Assembly (NCBI GenBank): GCA_053919585.1
Contig: CM132788.1
DNA length: 64,000 nt
DNA from: Euprymna scolopes
Lineage: Eukaryota
Strand: one strand, 5' to 3'
Made by a program: the position numbers and the translations under genes. The notes beneath the pieces were generated by a model. It searched no databases. It saw only the letters and a program-made list of their open reading frames with translations, and had not been told where the DNA came from. Shown here piece by piece: positions 9,481 to 36,560 of the stretch. Position 1 is the stretch's first letter. Every line of letters begins with the position of its first letter.

Positions 9481-10311
9481 GGTAATTCTCTACTGGTTAA
9501 TAATGGCAGAACCTATGATGACAAAGTGAGAAAAACGGAACCGAGGGAAAGAGGGATAATAAAGACCTGTTCAGACAGAAGTTACTTTGAAAATCAATCT
9601 CTAAAAATCGTTTAATGCATGCCAGCATGTAATACAGACATTAAACCGAATATGATAGTAATATATATGATGATGATGATGATGATGATAGCTTGTTTTT
9701 CGTGCAAGTAAACGATCTTTTTAATAATTGAATTCATGTTTTCTGTTAAAATTCCAAGTTTACTGTATGACTAGATGACCAACTGTTCATATTGTATCAT
9801 AGTCATTCAAAAGTTGGACTTTTTTCTAAAATACCGTCCAAGGTTTTTTCAATATTTTATTGCCATATATTCTACACTATTGTACACTCTCCATGAAAAT
9901 TGATGGAAAAAAACTCATACTTCACTTCATTTGTACTCCTAGCTATATAAAATCATAAAATTACATCAATAATTTAATTATTTATATTATTTCTTCTTCC
10001 GCTTATTCATTTAACTTTTCTGATTGAGAGGTCAGGTGTTTTGGGATATTATACTCTCCAGTTTATATGATTCAGTGGGTCAGCTGTCTTTAAATTCCAA
10101 TCGGCGCAGTCTTGTCTAATCATTTATTCCCAAATTTTATTTGACTGGCCAATCTTCCTGAGATTAAAGACATCCATGTTTCTGCAACGGTTTATCCAGG
10201 AGAATTATTACTCCCCACATGACCCTATCAGCATAACCTGATTTGTCCTTAGGATAACCTTTGTACTGGCAAATGTAATGCTTTCGGTATAAGTCATCGT
10301 CGTCATCATAA

Positions 10312-16598: not shown

Positions 16599-16638
<40 letters not shown>

Positions 16639-18489
16639 GCTCCACCTCCTACTCCTGTTTCAGTATTTAAGATGAATGTCTTGGACTCTAGGGTGGGCAA
16701 CAGCAGAAAATATCTCACGTTTATTCTCCATGCAGTCTGATGCATAGATATCAGTAACAGTGCATGTAGTCAAATCACTTCTTACACACGTATACCAGGT
16801 ATTTTTTCATCGATCATGCTCCCTAGTTCCTGTGATATCCATATGTGTAATGGAGTTGATGCAAGAGGTGGCACATTGTACATGACTAAACTACTTGAGA
16901 CACTGCATGAGATATCTAAAATCCCACCAATACCAAATTTCTGATGAAGCATAGTTGAAAGGATCCTTTTTCCAGTTTGCAGCCACAAAACCGTTGCGGA
17001 TCAGAAATATGACTGATAAAGTCATGTCTTGCTGCCATTAATTCAATATAGACAAGTTCTTGTTAAGTCGTCCTCTTAAATAATCAAATTCTACCTAATT
17101 TCCATAACTACCGGTCATTATGCTATTGTCTCACTGATCAGCTTACACTCATAAACCCTTATCCTCGAATGGCCTTCAGGCCTTGATAAGTGGTGACTCA
17201 ACTGTAAAAAAAGAAATAATAAAAGATGACAGTGAACAGAGTCTGAAAAGACTTTGCCCCAAATTTGGAATCATAAAATTAGGGTGAAAGAAGTCAATTC
17301 ACAATTGTAACAGAAAATAACTCTCTTCAGTCCAGATCAAAGTGTAGTATCTACCCTAAGCATTTATTTATGGAACCCAAAGCTTAATAATTTATTTATG
17401 AAACCCAAGTTTAATAAGCTATAACCTTGTACTTGTTTCTTAAGCTCTCCTAAACACTAGCCCAGTCCAATAATTTATGTAACTTATTTACAAATTCCTG
17501 TCTTAGACTCACTTATTTTAAACCTATATTTTATATTGTATGGCCATACCCCTATTGTCACTGCTGATTTAATATTATTAGATTGAGCTAGTGTTCATGA
17601 GAGGTGGTGAAAAATCAGGGTGTGTCCATATTTTGTGCCTTGTCACTTTTAGTATGTGCATGGTATCTCCCAAAATAAGGGTTGGGTAGGTGAGATGGGA
17701 TAGCTTAAGAGCTAAGGATGAACATGGATTTTTACAAATGTTTCTGATGTCTAAAGGCGCTCAATGCTCCACTTCAAACCTATATTTTGTTATATTCTAT
17801 CTGAAAGGGCGAGGGGCGGAAGGTTGAATATCAACTCTTCAACTACCGGCCCAGATCGAAGTGTTGTATCTGAGCCCGTCCTTGGTCATGAGTGATGCTA
17901 TAGCGATAGGGGAACTTTTTTAATGAAAGGCACTGAATCATGTACTACCTGACTGAATATGTATATGGAGGAGTAAAATACCAACGCTACATTACATGAA
18001 CTTTCACCTTTGACATTTTTCCTTCAAGTTGTTTGATTAAGCACTTATGAGTGGTATAAGGTTTTAATTCGTTACTAATAGTTTCATTAGTGTGTGTGTG
18101 TGTGTGTGCGCGCGCGCGTGCACGCGTGTACAGACGATTTACTTTGAAATATTTTTTTTTGTGAATAAAAATGCTTTTGAACTTAACATAAATAATCATA
18201 AAATAAAAACATTATGAATGTCAGTAAATTGAAATAAATATTATATTTATTGTAAATTTACTTTTATGGATGAATTTATTACAAATGAAGATTTAATAGC
18301 TGCCTGTCTAAAGCTGTAACTATACTATTACTTTTATTAATTGTAGTATTTATGCTCAATTCTATTTACTATGCATTTCAGACTACTGTATGTGCAATTC
18401 AGGGAGGAGGGTAGTGTAGTATCTGTTTTGCTGCCATAGTACTATCCTCCCAGTTCCGATTCCAACCCTAAAAAAGACTATTTGTATTA

Positions 18490-27843: not shown

Positions 27844-29669
27844 AATTCCATCTGAAACCTCAGCGAGACCAGCTTCCTTCCTACCTATACGTCTATTTAA
27901 CTCTTCATCATCATCTGGGTTTTCTAGTAGTACCATTACTGCCATCAATCTTTGTCTTCCTACGGAAGCTCTGACATTTATAAAGATAGTGTGTCTGCTT
28001 CATTTTGAAACTATCAGCAGGCTCAGAGATAAAGATGCGGACAAAACTAAAAGAAACTCAACGAAAAAGATTACGTATCCTTTTTCTTTTCTTTTTTTTA
28101 TAGAAAATCTTAGTCGAAGTTTTAAGCTGTCGTCGTCGTCATCATCATCATCATCATCTCATGTCATTCGTACTTCATCCAAACTACTAACTATATTTGA
28201 TGGACAAAATTACAATCGTATAGTAGTAATAAATAAATAAATGAACACTAAACATAGTAACTAAAACTTAGCAATAATGAATCTTAACAAACAAGATGTT
28301 TAAATTTTTCCCTTTCTCCTAATTGTTTTCGTCCGCGTCCAAATTAGTTGGTGAAAAACTAACTTGCTAAAAAAAAATGAAAATTCGTTTTTTGTTTCTT
28401 TCTTTGTTTAATCGTTTTATTTATAGAGAATAAAATAAATAAATAAATAAGTGAAAAAGGAAGTGCTTTTTTGCTTATCACCCACAGAGGGGCACGTGAC
28501 TCCCTTACCCTTAAAAAGGTGGTCGTTCCACTCCAGCCTCTAAGTCGTATTAAAAAATGTTAATAAATTTAATTAGCTTTAGGTTAGAGACGCGGGTTGT
28601 TCTATTAAAGAAACCAAAGAACTGAATGGTTGAATAAATTAAAATTCACACGTGAAACCACAATCTCTGTATTAATGCAACTATTAGACACGATATTGTG
28701 TGTGAGTGTGTTTCTCGCCTATGCATAACTTTGATAAATATGGATACAATTTTTTTTTTTAATCTATTTATCATGAATCAAATATATATTGAAATCAAGA
28801 GAGGGAAAATGAAAACGAATTTTTGTATTATTTTAGATTTATACCCCCCCCCCAGTCCTACCTCCATAAAATGAGATTTTACTTTTTTAAGCGATTACGT
28901 GTGAACATACTGAAAAACTTGGCGGAAAGAAGAAAAATATTATTTTAGAATTCAGAAATTGAGTTAGTTTGGCATATAAACTTAACATGAAATGATCTCT
29001 ATTTCCGAATAATTCTAATAGTTTAAGAAAGTTAACCATAGTTTTTAATATACTTACATCATGTGCATTTATTTATTTATTTTTCGGTGAGGTTTTTATG
29101 CGATTATATGTTGCGTTACGATCTTGCCACCGGGACTTAGGGTTAGTGGCAAAAAAAAAATTGTTAACAGCCCTAAAAAGTTTGAATGTCCCAGAAACGG
29201 GAGACTATTTTACGTTAAATTTGTATACGAAATTGATGTTCCACTCTAAATTATAGATTTACCCCCCCCCCATTTTTTTTCAGCGTGTTAAAAATAAGTA
29301 GAGAGCTTCATTTTTTTAGGGGGATAAATCAACGGAGAGTATTAATCTACAAATTGCTTTTTAAATTCCCAATCGGGTAGATACCGTTAGCCTTTAATAA
29401 AGCAAAAAAAAATAAATAAATAAAAATAAGGCTTTTCCCCAATCTCCGACTTTTTTTTTTTTTTTTTTTGTCAATTTGTTTCAGTCTTCTGTTTTCCAGT
29501 AAAAAAAGAAAACTAATTGTTTTCGTTCCTTTTTATTCGAGGGGCGAGAACATTTTTATACCTAGTATTCTCAGTCTCATTTCCTTCCCTCATTTATTCT
29601 TGGATAAATTTTGCTTCAATATAATTGCCATTATTTTTACTACTGGATAACTGCATGGTTGACGTGTTC

Positions 29670-29749
<80 letters not shown>

Positions 29750-31417
29750 TTTATTGCTGATACCGCCAGCTGATAGGAAAGAATTGAAGTGGGGAGAGAG
29801 AGAGAGATGGGGGGGTAGATGGCGGGGAACTAAAGAAAAAAAAGTGAAGGCAAGGGACAGTTCAGCCGGCGCTGAAGGGCTGGAGGTAAAAGGAACGTAG
29901 AGATTATATTTCTCTCCTAGCGGTACAAGATTTTTGTGGGCACACGTGCGCGCGTGTGCGTGTGTGAAGGGAAGGACCTCCCCTCCACGACTCCTTAATA
30001 CAACTATCATTAATTTCTACTACTGTCGCCGCCGCAGTTACTACTACGACCAGTACCGCTACGTCTACTACGCACACACGCATGCACGCATATAGCTAGC
30101 TACACCTTCTCATGTGCGATGATGATATATGTTTCCTCTTTTTCCTCCATCACCAGTACCGCCAAGGCAGCAGTAATCCTCGGACTAGATAGATCTCATC
30201 TTCTTATCTGTGCCCAATTCTACTGATGGGAAAACTTTCTCTTTTTCCTTTTTCTTCGTCTTGCTCCTCCTCGACAATTCTTTCCGTGCTATCATTTTCT
30301 CCGTGCATTCTAAGGAGTGGCAGATAGAAACATATAACTACCCTAAGACTTCCCTCTGTCTGTCTCTCTCCTTCTCTTGCTTTTTTTCTACCTCCCCCTC
30401 TTTCTCTACTTCCTCCCTCTCGTTCTCTGTTCTCACTCTGTACTCTCTATCTCTCCCTCCACCATCCCAGCAAAGCAGTCAACCACACTGCCTGGTTCTT
30501 AACAGACTGCACCCTAGCCGTGGATAGGCACTCACGCAGTTCTCAAATATATCGTTACTAAAAACTGAACAATGTTAGAATGTATCCAGAGGTGTTACTG
30601 ATCTAACTTTCACAAACCGACGAGGGGGAAAAATACACGCGAAACAAGAACTACCTCTGCTCTGCTCCCAATATTGGAAAAAGTAAAAAAAAAAAAAAAA
30701 AAAAAAATACCATTTCCTTTTTTACACTACAGAGAAGCACCTTTTTCTTTTTCATCACATTTTTACCAATACTGGTCAGATTCCTACATTTTTGTTCCGT
30801 AATTATCGGATATTTTCGTGACTACAAAATCGGCGTTTTTCTTCTTTTTTTTTTTTTGTTTATTTTTTTTATCTACGCGGAAAGAAATATAATTTAAAAC
30901 ACAAAAATCAAGTAATTATCCTGGCTTTTTGTGCAGTAATTGTTGATTTTTATTGTGGAAAAAAATACGACCAATTTTAACGCGTGCGTGTGTGTGTGCG
31001 CACATAAGAATTCCATCTCTGTTTGTCAAACGAATTCTTTTGCTCTTCCTAACGGTGAGTTAGTTTTCTTCATCCTTTCTGATTTCGACAATTCTTTGTA
31101 CTTAACAAAAAAACAAAAACAAAAAAAAACAAGGTATTGTTGATACCATTTATTTGGTGTTAAAAACATCCTTTTGCATAAAATTAAATTTCTAAAAAGA
31201 AATTCCTGGATTGAAACTAACTTGGATAATTGAATACTCTAACCGGCGGAATTACCTTTTTTTCATTGGATGAGGAATTTATGATTATTCTATTTCAAGA
31301 GGAGACGGAGGTATACTTCTGTGGAGTGCCATCGTTACAACAACAAAAAAAAGTAATCTCTTATACGGAATTTATTTTTTCCCCTTTGGATAATTTTTAA
31401 TAGTTTTTCGTTTGTTT

Positions 31418-31450
<33 letters not shown>

Positions 31451-31575
31451 CTTGATTCATTGCATTTTGAAAAGAACAAAAACGGGTGATTTTTTGCATA
31501 TAAAAAAATAAAATTATTAATTCGAATTGATTATCTATTCTTCAAGAAAGATTACCTATCCTTCAAAATATTAAA

Positions 31576-34500
31576 ATGGGTTGTTCCTTAGGAAAACATG
31601 CCAAAAAAGAAGCCGAGGAAGAGAATCTAGTGGATAAACCTGCTGAGAAAAACGAGGAAAATGTTTTATTTGAACGTCCAGCAGCCGGCAGTGGAGAAAA
31701 TGCCCAGGAACCACTTCTTCCTGATGATGCCACAGAAGTGGCGGCTAAAGAACCGGCTCCAGATACCAACGCAGAAATGGACAGTGTAAAAGACGAGCCA
31801 AAAGAGGATGATTCACTGACTGCGGAAGTTGCCAAAGCGATGGCGGCGTCCTCTGTCAAAATAGAAGAACCTGCCCTCTCCGAAACTACTGTCACCAAAG
31901 TGACTACAGAGACACATACAACTTCACATCATGTTGATACAAAGGGTGACAAAGTTGAAAATAAGGCTGTTAGTGATGATATTAATGCCACTGCTATAGA
32001 AGTAGCATCTGAAGTGGTCAAATCGGTAACAGAAGAATGCAAGACCATGGTCACCCGTGAGGTGAGCAAGGTTTCAAGCAGTACCTCAGAAAAGGTGAGC
32101 AAACAGAGCAGCGGCGCTTCCGAGACCATTAATAGGACTAGCGGTGACGTTTCTGAGACAATTACGAAACACACAAGCAGCGCCAGCGAATCGGTCAGCA
32201 AGCTAAGTTGCAGTAGCACCCAGGAGTACACAAGTATGGTCACGTCATCAGTGAGCAAATTTACAGATGCTCAAGGTAATGAAATTGAATCCACACCTAT
32301 TGTCGAAGTAAAGGAAGATGTTGTTACCGAAGTGAAAGAAAAGTCCGAACAATCCAGCAAAACTATCGAAGAGGTCATTGACGATGCAAAACAAGCTGCC
32401 GAAGAGAAAGCAGCCCAGAATGTTGCGGAAGGTACAGCTGATATATCTACAAAGGTCGAAGAAACTGTGATGCCCGTTGTCGAAGAAGGTATTTCTGAAG
32501 TTATTACAACTGCCAAAGAATCTGTACCAAGCTCGTTATTAGATGCAGCAATTCCAGTAACTGTAGAACATGATGCTGCAGTTGTGCAAGAACCAAGCAT
32601 TGCAATTTCTTCAGATGTTGACGTGAATAAAGTGGAGGAACTTGTCCAAGAGTCATCCACGGATGCCCCTGCTGTTGTTGAAGAGGCAGCTGTTGCCCCT
32701 GTTGAAGTTGATCTCACCGAGACAAGTGTGGACAGTGGTAAAATTGCTGAAGCTGATATTACCGAGACAAGTGTTGATGCCATGCTTGTGCCATCAAATG
32801 ATCTCCAAGAAACCAGTGTGGATAGTGGTGCCGTGCAAGAAGCTATCACTGAGACAAGTGTTGATAGCCTCCTTGAATCCTCCCCGAATAACTTTCCGCC
32901 TCCACCTGCTGTGGAAGGAGAAGAGGCAGTTGTTGAAAAAGCAGAAGATATATTTAAGAGTGAACATGAAAAGCAAGTTGAAGCAAGTCAAATCTTAGCT
33001 GCTGATATGATGACTGCTGAGGTTCCTTCTGCACTACCTTCCCCTAAGGGTGCATACGAGGAAGACATCTTAATGCTAAATGAGCAAGTTGAATTTTCTT
33101 CAAAAGAGAATGTTGAACCTATTGTCGAAGAAGGAAAGCAGGAAGTTCCTCTGCTTGAAGCGCCTGTCAGTGAACCAATAGAGGTTGCACCTGAAGCTGT
33201 ACAAGAAATTGAACCAGTAGAGGCTCTACCCGAGGTTGTAGAGGAGACTGAACCAGTTGAGGCTGTACCTGAAGTTGTACAGGAAACCGAACCAGTTAAG
33301 GTTGTACCTGAAGTTGTACAAGAAACTGAACCAATTGAGACTGTACCTGAAGGTGTACAAGAAACTGAACCAGTTGAAACTGTACCCGAAGTTATACCAG
33401 AAACTGAACCAGTAGAGACTGTACCCGAAGTTGTACCGGAAACTGAACCAGTTGAGACTGTACCTGAAAGTGTACAAGAAACTCAACCAGTTGAAACTGT
33501 ACCCGAAGTTGTACCAGAAACTGAACCAGTTGACACTGTACCTGAAGTTGTACCAGAAACTGAACCAGTTGAGACTGTACCTGAAGGTGTACAAGAAACT
33601 CAACCAGTTGAAACTGTACCCGAAGTTGTACAAGAAACTCAACCAGTTGAAACTGTACCTGAAGTTGTACCGGAAACTGAACCAGTTGAGACTGTACCCG
33701 AAGTTGTACCGGAAACTGAACCAGTTGAGACTGCACCCGAAGTTGTACCGGAAACTGAACCAGTTGAGACTGCACCCGAAGTGGTACCGGAAACTGAACC
33801 AGTTGAGACTGTACCCGAAGTTCTACCGGAAACTGAACCAGTTGAGACTGTACCCGAAGTTGTACCGGAAACTGAACCAGTTGAGACTGTACCCGAAGTT
33901 GTACCGGAAACTGAGCCAGTTGAGGCTGTACCCGAAGGTGTACAAGAAACTCAACCAGTTGAGGCTGTACCTGAAGGTATAGAAGAAATTAAATCAGAAG
34001 AGACAGAAGGTGAATTAGAAGAAAAACCTGTTGAGCAAACACTCAGTGAAAAACCAGAAGTATGTGATGTACCAATGAATGAAAATGTTGAAGCTGAAAG
34101 TGAAGAGGTCGTGGATTCCAAGGTTGAAAATGATAACGTATTGGCCGAGGCATCTACCATTCCTGCTGTTATAAGTGAGGGTTTAGAACAAACAGAAAGC
34201 GATGCTGCTAGTGAGGCAGTGGTAACATCAACACCCGAGGAAACTGAAACGGCAGAAGTAATCAGCCAAGAAGAGAAGGCTGACGTTGCCGCCGAGAATT
34301 TACCTGTTATCGAAAACAATGAAACTACAGAAGTTGCTGAGAGTGAAATTGTCTCAAACGGACCCGAACAACCAATAGACATTACTGGTCCCAGTGAAGA
34401 AGTGAGTGCCGGCACTACTGCTGCCAATCTTGTAGAATCTGTCTTAGATAGTGTGAAATCAGAAATTGCCGCTGTAATGGAGGCGTCACCTGCACAAAAG

Positions 34501-34611
34501 TCTGCAACTCTTTCCGAGAATGAGTTGGATAACGAGCTTAGTTCTTCGCAGGATATACAGTCACTTCCAAATGGAGAAAATCAGGTCCAGACACTGGAAG
34601 GTATGCCATAG
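31576..34611 (+). CDS. Intronless 1011-aa acidic, Glu/Val/Pro/Thr-rich, predicted disordered and N-acylated protein; putative membrane scaffold (AKAP-like architecture)
   Basis: 3036-bp ORF in DNA where chance ORFs are short; higher GC than flanks; aaaATGG start context with an in-frame TGA 48 nt upstream; MGCSLGK N-terminus; in-frame repeats with synonymous variation. No recognised homologue. Confidence 0.93.
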   Translation: MGCSLGKHAKKEAEEENLVDKPAEKNEENVLFERPAAGSGENAQEPLLPDDATEVAAKEPAPDTNAEMDSVKDEPKEDDSLTAEVAKAMAASSVKIEEPALSETTVTKVTTETHTTSHHVDTKGDKVENKAVSDDINATAIEVASEVVKSVTEECKTMVTREVSKVSSSTSEKVSKQSSGASETINRTSGDVSETITKHTSSASESVSKLSCSSTQEYTSMVTSSVSKFTDAQGNEIESTPIVEVKEDVVTEVKEKSEQSSKTIEEVIDDAKQAAEEKAAQNVAEGTADISTKVEETVMPVVEEGISEVITTAKESVPSSLLDAAIPVTVEHDAAVVQEPSIAISSDVDVNKVEELVQESSTDAPAVVEEAAVAPVEVDLTETSVDSGKIAEADITETSVDAMLVPSNDLQETSVDSGAVQEAITETSVDSLLESSPNNFPPPPAVEGEEAVVEKAEDIFKSEHEKQVEASQILAADMMTAEVPSALPSPKGAYEEDILMLNEQVEFSSKENVEPIVEEGKQEVPLLEAPVSEPIEVAPEAVQEIEPVEALPEVVEETEPVEAVPEVVQETEPVKVVPEVVQETEPIETVPEGVQETEPVETVPEVIPETEPVETVPEVVPETEPVETVPESVQETQPVETVPEVVPETEPVDTVPEVVPETEPVETVPEGVQETQPVETVPEVVQETQPVETVPEVVPETEPVETVPEVVPETEPVETAPEVVPETEPVETAPEVVPETEPVETVPEVLPETEPVETVPEVVPETEPVETVPEVVPETEPVEAVPEGVQETQPVEAVPEGIEEIKSEETEGELEEKPVEQTLSEKPEVCDVPMNENVEAESEEVVDSKVENDNVLAEASTIPAVISEGLEQTESDAASEAVVTSTPEETETAEVISQEEKADVAAENLPVIENNETTEVAESEIVSNGPEQPIDITGPSEEVSAGTTAANLVESVLDSVKSEIAAVMEASPAQKSATLSENELDNELSSSQDIQSLPNGENQVQTLEGMP
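33172..33990 (+). repeat. Coding minisatellite, 39 bp x 21 (EPVETVPEVVPET)
   Basis: 21 in-frame units counted, 819 bp, no indels. Confidence 0.97.
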
Positions 34612-35994
34612 TTGTTTACCGGCTTTGTCTTTTAGTGTGTCCTATATTTGGAGTTACCCCTCCTGAAACAAACAAACACAAACAAAAAAAAAAGCTTACT
34701 ACGACAGACATACATTTCTACTACTACTACTACTACTACTATACTACTACCACTACTACTACTATTAGCCTGAATGTTCGCATGCTACTCTTTGCCACTG
34801 GATTGTAATATTGGGACTTGCTGCAGGGGACCTTTTCTTTGTGACTCTCTCTAGAATTTATACAAAGTGAATGTAAAAAAAACGATTTAAACAAATATAT
34901 ATATATATATGTATATATATATAACATGTATGTACGCATGCAGCATACATATTTATGTATGTCTCTGCATACATACATACGTATGTATGTATATATATAT
35001 GTGTGTGTGTGTGTCTATCTGTATGCACACATGCCTATGATTCCTCTATATTCCTTGGGAATATACTAAACATGCACCAAGTAGTGCGCAACAGACTTGA
35101 AGAACGCACGTGCAAAACATTTTTGGAATTGAAGTCAGTGACAATGGCTGCTGACTGTTGTGGTTCTAGGTATTCTTTTCTGCTAAAAAGGCATAATCGT
35201 ATTTGAAATGTCACGATTCTTCTTTACCATTTTAATTGACTCGACTTTTTTTAATGCATATACAAAAAATTGATTAAATTTTTGTAAATGACTTTTGTGC
35301 ATATATTTCTTGTGGTGACACCCTGCAGAAAAGTCCATTGTTTTTTTTTTGTTTTTTTTTTTTTTTTCCTTTTTGTTTTATATTTAAGAGAAAAAAAAAA
35401 AAGCTCCCCAGCTCACCAAACATTATGCATCAAGCATGCTTTCCAGTATTATGAGTTGAGGATTTTCTTTTAAATTTTCACCGTTTTTTTTTTTTTACAA
35501 AAAGTAAATTTGAGGAAAAAAACATTCAAACATGTTGATATTTAAAGCTAATAATATATTGTCCATATTTTTCTTAAAACTGAACAAATAAACCATAATG
35601 CAATACTGAATATATAAAAAAAATCTAATTTTTGTGAAAATATTTTTTAAATATCCATTTTTTTTTTTAATTGGAATAATTTTTACTTTTTATATCATAA
35701 TTGCTGTATAGTTATTTTCATATTTTATTTTTAAACATTGGTGTGCATATTATGATCTTTGATAACTTGTTTTTTTTATGAATATTACTAGCTTGTTTTG
35801 TCTCAAATTGTTAAACTATATTAAAACTCATATAAATATTTTAAAGGGCAGTTACTTCCCTTTTATGAGATTTTAATCTTTTCCAAAACTATAAAAACAT
35901 ATTTTAGTTGAGAGAATTAGATTTTAGCATTTTCCCTTTTTTTTTCATAACACAATTTGTTTTTATTTTTAACATTAGTTATGAAAAAAGAATT

Positions 35995-36560
35995 ATACAT
36001 GAAGACTTTGCTAATACACCCTTCAAAATTGGGATTCTATTTTCTTTCTTTTTTTAGATGATTAAACACCTTGAAAATAACTTTGTAGTAAAAACATCGC
36101 AAAAGTTTTAGAAATTTGAATGGAGATCAGTTTTGCGTATACATTTATGTAAAATGATCACCTCTTTTCAAACAAGGAGTTTCTAACCACATAGCATTTT
36201 AAGGGCGTATCACGAAAGGCCATGGTACAATGAAAGCAAAATCTCTTAATGTATGCACATGATAAAAGTACACAATTTCTAATAAATGGTCCGGAAAACT
36301 TGGCAGTAAAAACAAAAATGTTACATGCCTACCTTAAGCTTACCATTAACACTAAGTCCGGATGGCCTCACCCCTCAAAAGGATTTAATTGAAGCTAGAA
36401 AATGGTTACATGTCAATACTATCTGATCGAAAATGGGTGATCTTTTTACGTTAAATTTATATACTAAACTGATATCCCAATCTAAAATCTAAATTTGTTT
36501 TATCATTAAAAAAAAATTATTGCCAAGTTTTCAAGATGTTTGTGCATACTTGCCAAAAAA
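35995..36560. repeat. Old dispersed repeat, inverted homologue at ~59090-59620
   Basis: taaaatgatcacctcttttcaaacaaggagtttctaaccacatagcattttaagggcgtat versus the reverse complement taaaatgatcatctatttttagaccagaaatttctaactggatagcgttttaagggcatat. Confidence 0.6.

What the first reader, a model, noticed from the sequence alone, without database searches (positions are those of the whole stretch)
31576..34611. Orphan intronless acylated acidic scaffold protein built from short linear motifs
Seen: MGCSLGK start, extreme acidity, very few aromatic residues, no globular domain, and an ordered series of modules (helix 140-155, 11-mer repeat, 4x ETSVD, FPPPP, 21x 13-mer spacer, C-terminal helix). Known: MGC starts signal Gly2 myristoylation plus Cys3 palmitoylation (Fyn, Lck, G-alpha-i, smAKAP). 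Gravin/AKAP12, MARCKS, BASP1 and GAP-43 are acylated acidic disordered cortical proteins. Inference: a lineage-specific or convergent membrane-cortex signalling scaffold, isolated in about 30 kb of repeat-only DNA on each side.
Basis: partly seen in the sequence, partly recalled or inferred. Interest (0 to 1): 0.75.

Follow-up and report, generated by a model that had tools for sequence, protein, structure and literature searches.

The report
Giant acylated first exon of Sp17-like gene
The long acidic reading frame is real and expressed, but it is neither orphan nor intronless. It is a cephalopod-enlarged, lipid-anchor-type alternative first coding exon of the conserved Sp17-like (RIIa/IQ, calmodulin-binding) gene, and it is spliced to exons lying outside the window.

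Summary
Observation confirmed. The ORF at 31576-34611 (+) encodes 1011 aa: MGCSLGK start, pI 4.05, 249 D+E against 49 K+R, 7 aromatics. It has four ETSVD motifs, FPPPP and a 39-bp x 20.7 in-frame array, and AlphaFold finds no domain (mean pLDDT 35).

Interpretation partly supported.
- Not orphan: Octopus orthologues match at E 1e-104, with conserved islands of 73-94% identity in a 17-36% background.
- Not intronless: RNA contigs from three studies leave the genome exactly after 34600 (GAAG|GTATGC) and continue E-T-G-Q-D-P. The last three codons and the stop are intron.
- That next exon is the box that follows the RIIa domain in Sp17/SPA17 proteins. In Octopus the MGC form runs on into 5-6 IQ calmodulin-binding motifs. 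In Argonauta the same tail carries an RIIa start, and that protein aligns full-length to mammalian Sp17 (E 5e-26).
- Abalone, mussel and clam have a short MGxxxS alternative first exon spliced to the same box. In the Mytilus genome this exon lies between the RIIa exon and the shared exon, with the same intron phase and the same split Glu codon as here.

Likely function (inferred): a membrane-tethered, disordered, calmodulin-storing scaffold of the GAP-43/igloo kind. The AKAP reading is weak. Only this window's own first-stage notes overlap this finding; the scan had not found it on other DNA.

The parts
30338..31575 (+). Probable long unspliced 5' UTR of the same exon. The start is approximate. 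It holds 4 uATGs and a 40-nt T run at 31411-31450.
   Evidence: RNA contigs of X4, X14 and X1 are collinear with the genome over 30338-31400 and from 31464 on, at depths like that of the ORF. Assemblies break only at low-complexity runs. The uATG count and the in-frame stop at 31528 come. No single contig bridges the T run, so linkage to the ORF is inferred.
31576..34600 (+). Coding part of the giant alternative first exon: 1008 codons plus the first base (G) of a split Glu codon.
   Evidence: ORF. Contigs 31464-33364 and 33885-34600 in three runs. Orthologous to Octopus P0001/P0002.
31576..31719 (+). Residues 1-48: MGC acylation signal (Gly2 myristoylation type, Cys3 palmitoylation type) followed by a mixed basic/acidic stretch. 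94% identical to Octopus.
31978..32070 (+). Residues 135-165: conserved predicted amphipathic helix, 90% identical to Octopus. It fits the loose AKAP consensus at aa 140.
   Evidence: The consensus match itself is not above chance.
32071..32268 (+). Residues 166-231: Ser/Thr-rich 11-residue repeats (about six units), 59% identical to Octopus and predicted helical at low confidence.
32710..32865 (+). Residues 379-430: four ETSVD motifs spaced 15, 15 and 14 residues apart. All four are conserved in Octopus (73% block identity).
32893..32907 (+). FPPPP with acidic flanks; Octopus has LPPPPPP at the same place. Candidate EVH1 or profilin-type proline motif (inferred).
32992..33066 (+). Residues 473-497: conserved island ending PSALPSPKGAYEED, 88% identical to Octopus. 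Partner unknown.
33171..33976 (+). In-frame 39-bp (13-aa, TEPVETVPEVVPE-type) tandem array, 20.7 copies. It is lineage-specific: Octopus has only a degenerate E/V/P-rich stretch there (18% identity).
   Evidence: RNA assemblies break inside it.
34420..34485 (+). Residues 949-970: predicted amphipathic helix that fits the AKAP consensus but is not conserved in Octopus (36% identity).
34546..34599 (+). Residues 991-1008: conserved exon end (QDIQSLPNGENQVQT.E), 89% identical to Octopus.
34598..34606 (+). Splice donor GAAG|GTATGC, phase 1. The cut lies between 34600 and 34601.
   Evidence: Contigs of X4, X14 and X1 (three studies) leave the genome exactly after 34600 and share one continuation that reads (G)AA ACA GGC CAA GAT CCT = E-T-G-Q-D-P. 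Depth drops to 0 (X4) or about a tenth to a fifth (X1, X14) behind it. Both first exons of Mytilus use the same phase and the same split Glu codon.
34601..34611 (+). Read-through codons (G)-M-P plus the stop. This is the start of an intron of more than 29.4 kb, not normal coding sequence.
   Evidence: The continuation is absent from the window, and no IQ or RIIa exon lies in the window.

Best explanation
The ORF is the first coding exon (about 4.3 kb with its 5' UTR) of the membrane-anchor isoform of the cephalopod Sp17/SPA17-like gene.

Other molluscs make two N-terminal proteoforms from this gene by alternative first exons. One exon encodes the RIIa docking/dimerisation domain. The other is a short exon of 22-31 residues starting MGxxxS, an N-myristoylation signal. 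Both splice in phase 1 to a shared exon (ETGHDP...DRFYNN), which is followed by an array of IQ calmodulin-binding motifs.

In cephalopods the acylation-type exon has grown to 835-1008 residues. It has gained Cys3, making a dual myristoyl/palmitoyl signal, and it became a very acidic disordered chain with a few conserved short motifs. This species added a 21-copy 13-residue spacer.

Shown here: the ORF, its transcription, the start codon, the splice donor and the identity of the next exon, the orthology to Octopus, and the gene architecture in Mytilus and in octopods.

Inferred: Gly2 is myristoylated and Cys3 palmitoylated, which fixes the N-terminus to a membrane. The roughly 1000-residue polyanionic chain acts as a flexible tether and motif platform. 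The IQ tail holds several calmodulins near the membrane and releases or exchanges them with Ca2+ or phosphorylation, as the 'calpacitins' GAP-43/neuromodulin and Drosophila igloo do.
For: - ORF and composition.
- Transcription and splice. Three studies show the junction exactly after 34600 with the continuation E-T-G-Q-D-P.
- Octopus orthologues: P0001 and P0002 at E 1e-104 and 1e-98. Octopus sinensis isoforms X2-X5 join the same exon end (..NGENQVQTEE) to ETGHDPV..DRQYN and then 5-6 IQ motifs.
- Argonauta hians P0127 has an RIIa start plus the same tail: 66% identity over 95% of the Octopus tail. It aligns full-length to mammalian Sp17, 9fqr_Ic, at E 5e-26.
- Haliotis P0128/P0129, Mytilus P0073 and Ruditapes P0149 start MGGKLSR, MGGKFSR and MGNNFSL and join the same ETGHDP box. 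Their sister isoforms start with RIIa.
- Mytilus edulis locus L001: RIIa exon at 10001-10153, acylation-type exon at 17548-17640, shared exon from 19141. Both donors read G|GT and the acceptor reads CAG|AA, the same phase and split Glu codon as the window.
- Disorder. Islands of conservation.
Against: - Only 30 nt of the downstream exon were seen for this species. Its IQ tail is inferred from Octopus and Argonauta.
- No RIIa exon lies in the window, so an RIIa-start isoform in this species is not shown.
- The Argonauta RIIa-plus-tail protein is a gene prediction over 270 kb, and its DNA could not be read.
- No RIIa-plus-tail isoform of Octopus came up in the search.
- Beyond MG, the cephalopod exon shows no sequence similarity to the short acylation exons of other molluscs. 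Homology of the exon itself, as opposed to its position and phase, is therefore inferred.
- Some unspliced RNA crosses the donor (X14 record 14, depth 6.5 against 16.7). A minor read-through product ending GMP cannot be excluded.
- Acylation, calmodulin binding and membrane location are all untested.
Confidence: 0.8

Rival explanations
1. One reading: a stand-alone, intronless, lineage-specific (orphan) acylated acidic scaffold whose whole product is the 1011-aa ORF ending GMP.
For: The ORF closes 11 nt behind the donor. Octopus bimaculoides and O. vulgaris gene models (P0001, P0124) are read-through models that end GML. A low level of RNA crosses the donor unspliced in X14 and X1. A HMMER scan of 1.84 billion representatives with the N-terminal profile found no relative outside Octopus.
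Against: The dominant contigs of three studies splice exactly after 34600, and depth behind it is 0 in the poly(A) run X4. The junction and the next exon are orthologous to Octopus sinensis isoforms X2-X5 and to the Sp17-like genes of other molluscs. RNA crossing the donor is what pre-mRNA would give.
Confidence: 0.07
2. The exon makes the protein an A-kinase anchoring protein. One of its amphipathic helices (aa 135-165 or aa 949-970) docks the RIIa-type D/D domain of PKA regulatory subunits, or of R2D2 proteins such as the gene's own RIIa isoform, at the membrane. smAKAP, AKAP12 and Drosophila Akap200 work this way.
For: The AKAP consensus fits at aa 140, 874 and 949. The helix at aa 135-165 is 90% identical between this species and Octopus, is predicted helical, and has among the higher confidence values in the model. 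It also has a high hydrophobic moment. The gene family itself carries an RIIa domain.
Against: The consensus is loose. There are 3 matches against 2.6 expected in shuffles of the non-repeat sequence (47% of shuffles reach 3); the strict form gives 2 against 0.7 (16%). The C-terminal helix is not conserved in Octopus, where a proline and charged residues take its place. No AKAP family is detected by Pfam or PDB searches. Binding could not be tested with these tools.
Confidence: 0.12
3. The ORF is a non-functional by-product: an expanded low-complexity or satellite-derived open frame that is transcribed but has no selected protein function.
For: A quarter of it is a young 39-bp tandem array. Most of the chain is only 17-36% identical to Octopus. 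There is no domain.
Against: A 3-kb open frame in 31% GC DNA is kept open in species as far apart as this one and Octopus. It has islands of 88-94% identity, a conserved start, a conserved exon end and a conserved splice phase. It is strongly represented in poly(A) RNA of several studies.
Confidence: 0.02

Closest known systems
Sp17 / SPA17 (sperm surface protein 17; an R2D2 protein of cilia and flagella)
   Same: Same gene family. The exon splices to the Sp17 box (E-T-G-x-D-P ... DRxYN). In octopods an IQ-motif tail follows. The Argonauta RIIa-start product of the orthologous gene aligns over its first ~145 residues to the whole length of mammalian Sp17 (E 5e-26).
   Different: This isoform replaces the RIIa domain with an acylation signal plus about 1000 acidic disordered residues. 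The invertebrate tail has 5 or more IQ motifs instead of one. Mammalian Sp17 is about 150 aa and soluble or axonemal. No such acylated isoform was found described in the papers searched.
Short N-myristoylation-type alternative first exons of mollusc Sp17-like genes (RefSeq models in Haliotis, Mytilus, Ruditapes; also amphioxus MGSCSSK / MCGCTSS forms)
   Same: Same position in the gene (Mytilus L001), same phase-1 donor with the same split Glu codon, same acceptor exon, and an MG start that fits the myristoylation pattern.
   Different: Those exons encode 22-31 residues, are basic rather than acidic, and lack Cys3. The cephalopod exon is 30-40 times longer, acidic and motif-rich, and shows no detectable sequence similarity to them beyond MG.
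Calpacitins: GAP-43/neuromodulin, neurogranin, PEP-19 and Drosophila igloo (PMC9618489 names the group; Neel and Young 1994 for igloo)
   Same: The whole isoform works like them on paper: an N-terminal lipid anchor, an acidic disordered chain, and IQ motif(s) of the AATKIQAxFRGH type that bind calmodulin. The tail hits PCP4 and the neuromodulin IQ weakly in the PDB.
   Different: No sequence kinship outside the IQ motif, and no Pfam neuromodulin hit. It is about four times longer, with several IQ motifs at the C-terminal end rather than one near the anchor. Descent of igloo or GAP-43 from this isoform is an untested idea.
Acylated acidic AKAP scaffolds: AKAP12/gravin, smAKAP, Drosophila Akap200; also MARCKS and BASP1
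   Same: MG(C) acyl anchor, strong acidity, disorder, and candidate amphipathic helices.
   Different: No family signature is detected, the AKAP consensus is at chance level, there is no MARCKS-type basic effector domain, and RII binding is untested.
Crustacean long acylated IQ proteins (Daphnia P0089, 1912 aa; ostracod P0100, 1237 aa)
   Same: Same layout: an MGxxxS start (with Cys residues in Daphnia), a long acidic stretch of about 150-790 residues, then many IQ motifs.
   Different: There is no detectable similarity in the acidic part, and whether these come from the Sp17-like gene was not tested. They may be independent expansions.

Membership tests
Sp17/SPA17-like gene (acylated isoform) | Exon joined to the Sp17 box exon (E-T-G-x-D-P ... 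DRxYN) in phase 1 | tested here: met
   The RNA continuation after 34600 reads E-T-G-Q-D-P-V in three studies. Mytilus has the same phase and split Glu codon. Octopus has the same junction. Only 10 codons were seen, so the DRxYN part is inferred.
Sp17/SPA17-like gene (acylated isoform) | IQ calmodulin-binding motif(s) in the C-terminal part | not testable with these tools
   The tail lies outside the window. The Octopus orthologue has 5 IQ (Pfam E 2.6e-29), isoform X2 has 6, and Argonauta has 5.
Sp17/SPA17-like gene (acylated isoform) | RIIa docking/dimerisation domain (PF02197) | tested here: not met
   RIIa is absent from this exon and from the whole window. In this isoform class it is replaced by design. 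It is present in the Argonauta product of the orthologous gene. This isoform is therefore a product of an Sp17-family gene but not an R2D2 protein.
Dually acylated (myristoyl-Gly2, palmitoyl-Cys3) proteins | N-terminal M-G-{EDRKHPFYW}-x-x-[STAGCN]-{P} with Cys3, at a true translation start | tested here: met
   MGCSLGK fits the pattern. An in-frame stop at 31528 lies in the transcribed leader. The start is identical in Octopus.
Dually acylated (myristoyl-Gly2, palmitoyl-Cys3) proteins | Actual lipid attachment and membrane binding | not testable with these tools
   Needs metabolic or click labelling and G2A/C3S mutants.
AKAP (A-kinase anchoring protein) | Amphipathic helix fitting the RII-binding consensus beyond chance | tested here: inconclusive
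   3 consensus hits against 2.6 expected. The helix at aa 135-165 is conserved and amphipathic. The helix at aa 949-970 is not conserved.
AKAP (A-kinase anchoring protein) | Binding of the PKA R-subunit D/D domain | not testable with these tools
   No complex prediction or assay was available.
AKAP12/gravin, MARCKS, BASP1, GAP-43 (sequence families) | Match to the family's Pfam model | tested here: not met
   No Pfam family matches the exon at E up to 10. For the full Octopus protein only IQ matches. PDB sequence and profile searches gave nothing above noise.
Calpacitin-like function (works like, not member of) | Lipid anchor plus acidic disordered chain plus IQ motif in one polypeptide | tested here: met
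   Met for the Octopus orthologue P0002/P0123. For this species the anchor and the chain are shown and the IQ part is inferred.

The most novel reading that the evidence does not exclude
One gene may encode both halves of an AKAP-type docking pair. The RIIa-start isoform would supply the D/D domain, and the acylated isoform would supply a conserved amphipathic helix (aa 135-165). The membrane-anchored giant isoform would then recruit the RIIa isoform (or PKA-RII) together with many calmodulins to the cell cortex. A related reading: this acylated Sp17-gene isoform is the invertebrate counterpart, or even the source, of the GAP-43/igloo type of membrane calmodulin store.
Probability: 0.1. Interest if true: 0.75.

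Novelty: new variant of a known kind. Interest (0 to 1): 0.45.

Why it matters
- It corrects an apparent orphan gene into a known family. It also shows that the public Octopus names for it ('golgin subfamily B member 1', 'IgA1 protease autotransporter-like') are artefacts of composition.
- Invertebrate Sp17-like genes carry a second, lipid-anchor-type first exon that gives a membrane-bound calmodulin-binding proteoform. I found no paper describing this.
- In cephalopods that exon grew 30-40-fold into a polyanionic motif platform. This is a clean natural case of how a disordered region, its short conserved motifs and a young tandem spacer evolve inside a single exon.
- If the protein sits at the cortex of neurons or ciliated cells, it would be a large local calmodulin buffer in animals known for elaborate Ca2+ signalling.

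Tried and rejected
- Pfam on the exon: nothing.
- PDB sequence and profile searches of the N-terminal half: nothing above noise.
- HMMER scan of 1.84 billion representatives with the N-terminal profile: only Octopus, plus one spurious repeat protein (P0003, 15-residue DLTETIGD repeats).
- Search for the downstream exon, IQ exons and an RIIa exon inside the window, using tblastn with Octopus, Argonauta, Mytilus and chiton queries, an IQ regular expression and the 30-nt continuation: none found. The only hits were His runs in simple repeats.
- Reading the Octopus, Argonauta, Haliotis and P0175 loci: not on record, too long, or file too large.
- The bacterial-type promoter/terminator scan behind the ORF is irrelevant for this eukaryote.
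- AKAP consensus as evidence: rejected as at chance level.
- Literature searches for an acylated Sp17 isoform or a cephalopod IQ/myristoyl protein: nothing pertinent.
- I first suspected a small 5' UTR intron (31066 to about 31475) from the sequence. RNA contigs are collinear across 30722-31400, so it is not supported.
Full report
**1. Observation**

The ORF at 31576-34611 (+) exists and encodes 1011 aa. It is the only long ORF in a 64-kb window of about 31% GC; the next longest outside it has 179 aa.

The product is extreme in composition:
- pI 4.05
- 249 Asp+Glu against 49 Lys+Arg
- 7 aromatic residues

The listed modules are all there:
- MGCSLGK at the start, which fits the N-myristoylation pattern and has Cys3
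- ETSVD at aa 382, 397, 412 and 426, and FPPPP at aa 440
- a 39-bp (13-aa) in-frame tandem array at 33171-33976, 20.7 copies, 89% matches, no indels

Pfam finds nothing even at E 10. AlphaFold2, run on a three-sequence alignment, gives mean pLDDT 35 and no folded domain. It predicts only isolated helices at 130-177, 201-228, 247-316, 449-480 and 950-969, with pLDDT at best 50-61.

**2. It is not an orphan**

A word-based search returned two Octopus proteins at E 1e-104 and 1e-98. These are O. bimaculoides XP_014778084 ('IgA1 protease autotransporter-like', 859 aa) and O. sinensis 'golgin subfamily B member 1 isoform X3' (1185 aa). Both names are composition artefacts. The genome is thus a cephalopod's, which other notes of the scan on this genome also say.

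The alignment shows islands of conservation in a poorly conserved background:

| Residues | Feature | Identity to Octopus |
|---|---|---|
| 1-48 | N-terminus | 94% |
| 135-165 | helix | 90% |
| 166-231 | Ser-rich 11-mers | 59% |
| 379-430 | four ETSVD | 73% |
| 473-497 | ...PSALPSPKGAYEED | 88% |
| 991-1008 | exon end | 89% |
| elsewhere | background | 17-36% |

The 13-mer array is not present as such in Octopus (18% identity). The C-terminal 'AKAP helix' (aa 949-970) is not conserved either (36% identity; Octopus has charged residues and a proline there).

**3. It is not intronless**

Sequencing runs of nine studies hold the stretch, several of them poly(A) RNA. I laid four runs on 30300-36200.
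- Contigs of X4, X14 and X1 (three studies) follow the genome over 31464-33364 and 33885-34600. The gap is the tandem array, where assemblies break.
- All three then leave the genome exactly after 34600, at GAAG|GTATGC.
- They share one continuation, which reads (G)AA ACA GGC CAA GAT CCT GTT, that is E-T-G-Q-D-P-V.
- Depth behind 34600 falls to 0 in the poly(A) run X4, and to about a tenth (X1) or a fifth (X14) in the other two.

The last three codons (G-M-P) and the stop are therefore intron. The continuation does not occur anywhere in the window, so the intron exceeds 29.4 kb.

The start codon holds:
- Transcripts are collinear with the genome from 31464.
- An in-frame TGA lies at 31528.
- The context is AAAATGG.
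- MGCSLGK is conserved in Octopus.

Upstream, 30338-31400 is covered at similar depth and looks like a leader of about 1.2 kb. No contig bridges the 40-nt T run at 31411-31450, so that link is inferred.

**4. What the exon is spliced to**

O. sinensis isoforms X2-X5 join the same conserved exon end (..NGENQVQTEE) to ETGHDPV..DRQYN and then to 5-6 IQ motifs. Pfam scores the IQ motifs at E 2.6e-29.

Searching with that tail brought up mollusc proteins that begin with an RIIa domain (PF02197). They continue ..R[DE]|ETGHDPAVHGA.LEDRFYNN.. and then carry many IQ motifs. They come from Mytilus, scallops, oysters, abalone and a chiton.

The best short hit is Argonauta hians P0127 (510 aa). It has an RIIa start followed by a tail 66% identical over 95% of the Octopus tail, sharing even the His run and the individual IQ units. 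P0127 aligns over its first ~145 residues (RIIa, the DP..DR.YN box and the first IQ motifs) to the whole length of mammalian Sp17, at E 5e-26 and 5e-24. The cephalopod gene is therefore an Sp17/SPA17 orthologue with a lengthened IQ tail.

**5. The acylation-type first exon is an old alternative**

Sister isoforms of the same genes in other molluscs replace the RIIa exon with a short exon that fits the myristoylation pattern and joins the same ETGHDP box:
- Haliotis rufescens and H. rubra: MGGKLSRLADIVNKRRKSD..
- Mytilus trossulus: MGGKFSRLKNFVESKKRN..
- Ruditapes: MGNNFSLFQGCTSKKK..

Amphioxus isoforms start MGSCSSK or MCGCTSS in place of RIIa.

In the Mytilus edulis genome (L001) I located the exons:
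- RIIa exon at 10001-10153
- acylation-type exon at 17548-17640
- shared exon from 19141

The acylation exon thus sits inside the first intron, downstream of the RIIa exon. Both donors are phase 1 with a G before GT, and the acceptor reads CAG|AA, so the split codon is Glu. The window's donor (GAA G|GT) and its RNA continuation (AA ACA GGC) have the same phase and the same split Glu codon.

This supports orthology of the junction. It identifies the window's ORF as the cephalopod version of that alternative first exon, grown from about 25-30 to 835 (Octopus) or 1008 (this species) residues and given a Cys3.

The acidic part has no detectable relative outside cephalopods. HMMER with the N-terminal profile against 1.84 billion representatives found only Octopus and one spurious repeat protein. 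'Lineage-specific' is thus right for the exon's content, not for the gene.

The Argonauta gene spans 270 kb. That explains why the exon looks isolated in this window and why neither the RIIa exon nor the IQ exons lie within it.

**6. How it most likely works**

Shown: an expressed mRNA starting with an MGC-type open frame, about 1000 acidic disordered residues with conserved islands, and splicing to the Sp17 box.

Inferred from orthologues: several IQ motifs at the C-terminal end.

Inferred from established knowledge:
- N-myristoyltransferase acts on Gly2 with a small residue at position 6, and Cys3 is then palmitoylated, as in G-alpha-i and Src-family kinases. This would attach the N-terminus to a membrane.
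- IQ motifs of the AATKIQAxFRGH type bind calmodulin, often Ca2+-free.

The whole isoform would therefore be a membrane-tethered, flexible, polyanionic chain ending in a multi-calmodulin store. This resembles the calpacitins GAP-43/neuromodulin and igloo (grouping cited in PMC9618489).

The conserved islands would be partner sites:
- [FL]PPPP with acidic flanks fits the EVH1/profilin type of motif.
- The 11-residue Ser-rich repeats and the helix at 135-165 may form an amphipathic helical segment.
- The four ETSVD units and the PSALPSPKGAYEED island have no partner I can name.

The 13-mer array is a young spacer.

**7. The AKAP idea**

The loose AKAP consensus fits at aa 140, 874 and 949. Shuffles of the non-repeat sequence give 2.6 matches on average, and 47% of shuffles reach three. 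The strict form gives 2 against 0.7.

Only the helix at 135-165 is conserved. It is an attractive candidate because the gene family itself carries the RIIa domain that such helices bind. That is a lead, not a result.

**8. Rivals**

- A stand-alone 1011-aa product through intron read-through cannot be fully excluded. X14 has one unspliced contig across the donor at depth 6.5 against 16.7. This is what pre-mRNA would give, and the poly(A) run shows none.
- A non-functional open frame is contradicted by conservation of the start, the islands, the exon end and the splice phase.

**9. Novelty**

The gene family is known. The long Octopus models are in RefSeq under misleading names, and the short acylated isoforms of other molluscs exist only as unnamed predictions. 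I found no paper on an acylated Sp17-gene isoform or on this cephalopod protein.

I rate it a new variant of a known kind. It is of moderate interest for three reasons: it corrects an 'orphan', it reveals a conserved two-promoter design of Sp17-like genes, and it gives a clear case of exon gigantism in a disordered region. Crustaceans have long acylated acidic IQ proteins of the same layout (Daphnia 1912 aa, ostracod 1237 aa). Whether these are related was not tested.

**10. Limits**

- Only the one read-laying run shows 30 letters of the continuation.
- DNA of the octopod loci could not be read.

Noticed in passing
window 34506 and 34563: RNA contigs read G where the genome has A: at 34506 in all three runs and at 34563 in X4 and X1. 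Both changes are synonymous (Ala977, Ser996). This may be strain polymorphism or A-to-I editing, which is common in cephalopods. It cannot be told apart without DNA of the same animals.
   Followed up: partly
window 31339: In X14 and X1 one contig fits the genome only from 31339 rightwards and carries unrelated letters before it (ending ..AAAATGAAGG). The genome has AC just before 31339, which would be a GT donor on the minus strand. Possible causes are an antisense spliced transcript or an insertion/deletion haplotype in the leader.
   Followed up: no
window 35404-36072: A stretch inside the intron behind the exon is covered by RNA contigs at about a tenth of the exon's depth. X14 and X1 have a loose end before 35652. 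This may be a transcribed repeat or an unannotated minor exon.
   Followed up: no
window 31411-31450: A 40-nt T run in the probable 5' leader breaks every transcript assembly. It leaves the linkage of the upstream 1.1 kb to the ORF unproven.
   Followed up: partly
L001 52660-58544 (Mytilus edulis): The Mytilus Sp17-like gene models run on into a Pex19 domain (PF04614) and end in a CAAX box (CTIL). This is either a true fusion or a read-through annotation joining two neighbouring genes.
   Followed up: no
proteins P0089 (Daphnia sinensis) and P0100 (Notodromas monacha): These crustacean proteins have a myristoylation-type start, about 150-790 acidic residues and 16 IQ motifs each. The layout is the same as in the cephalopod isoform, possibly through independent expansion.
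   Followed up: partly
proteins P0180 and P0182 (Branchiostoma): Amphioxus Sp17-like genes also have isoforms that replace RIIa with MGSCSSK.. or MCGCTSS.. starts. The latter resembles the Cys-rich palmitoylation start of GAP-43. This hints that the two-start design is older than molluscs.
   Followed up: no
window 16604-16645, 9640-9720, 28140-28157: His-run 'hits' to the Octopus and Argonauta tails are simple CAT/CAC repeats, not exons.
   Followed up: yes
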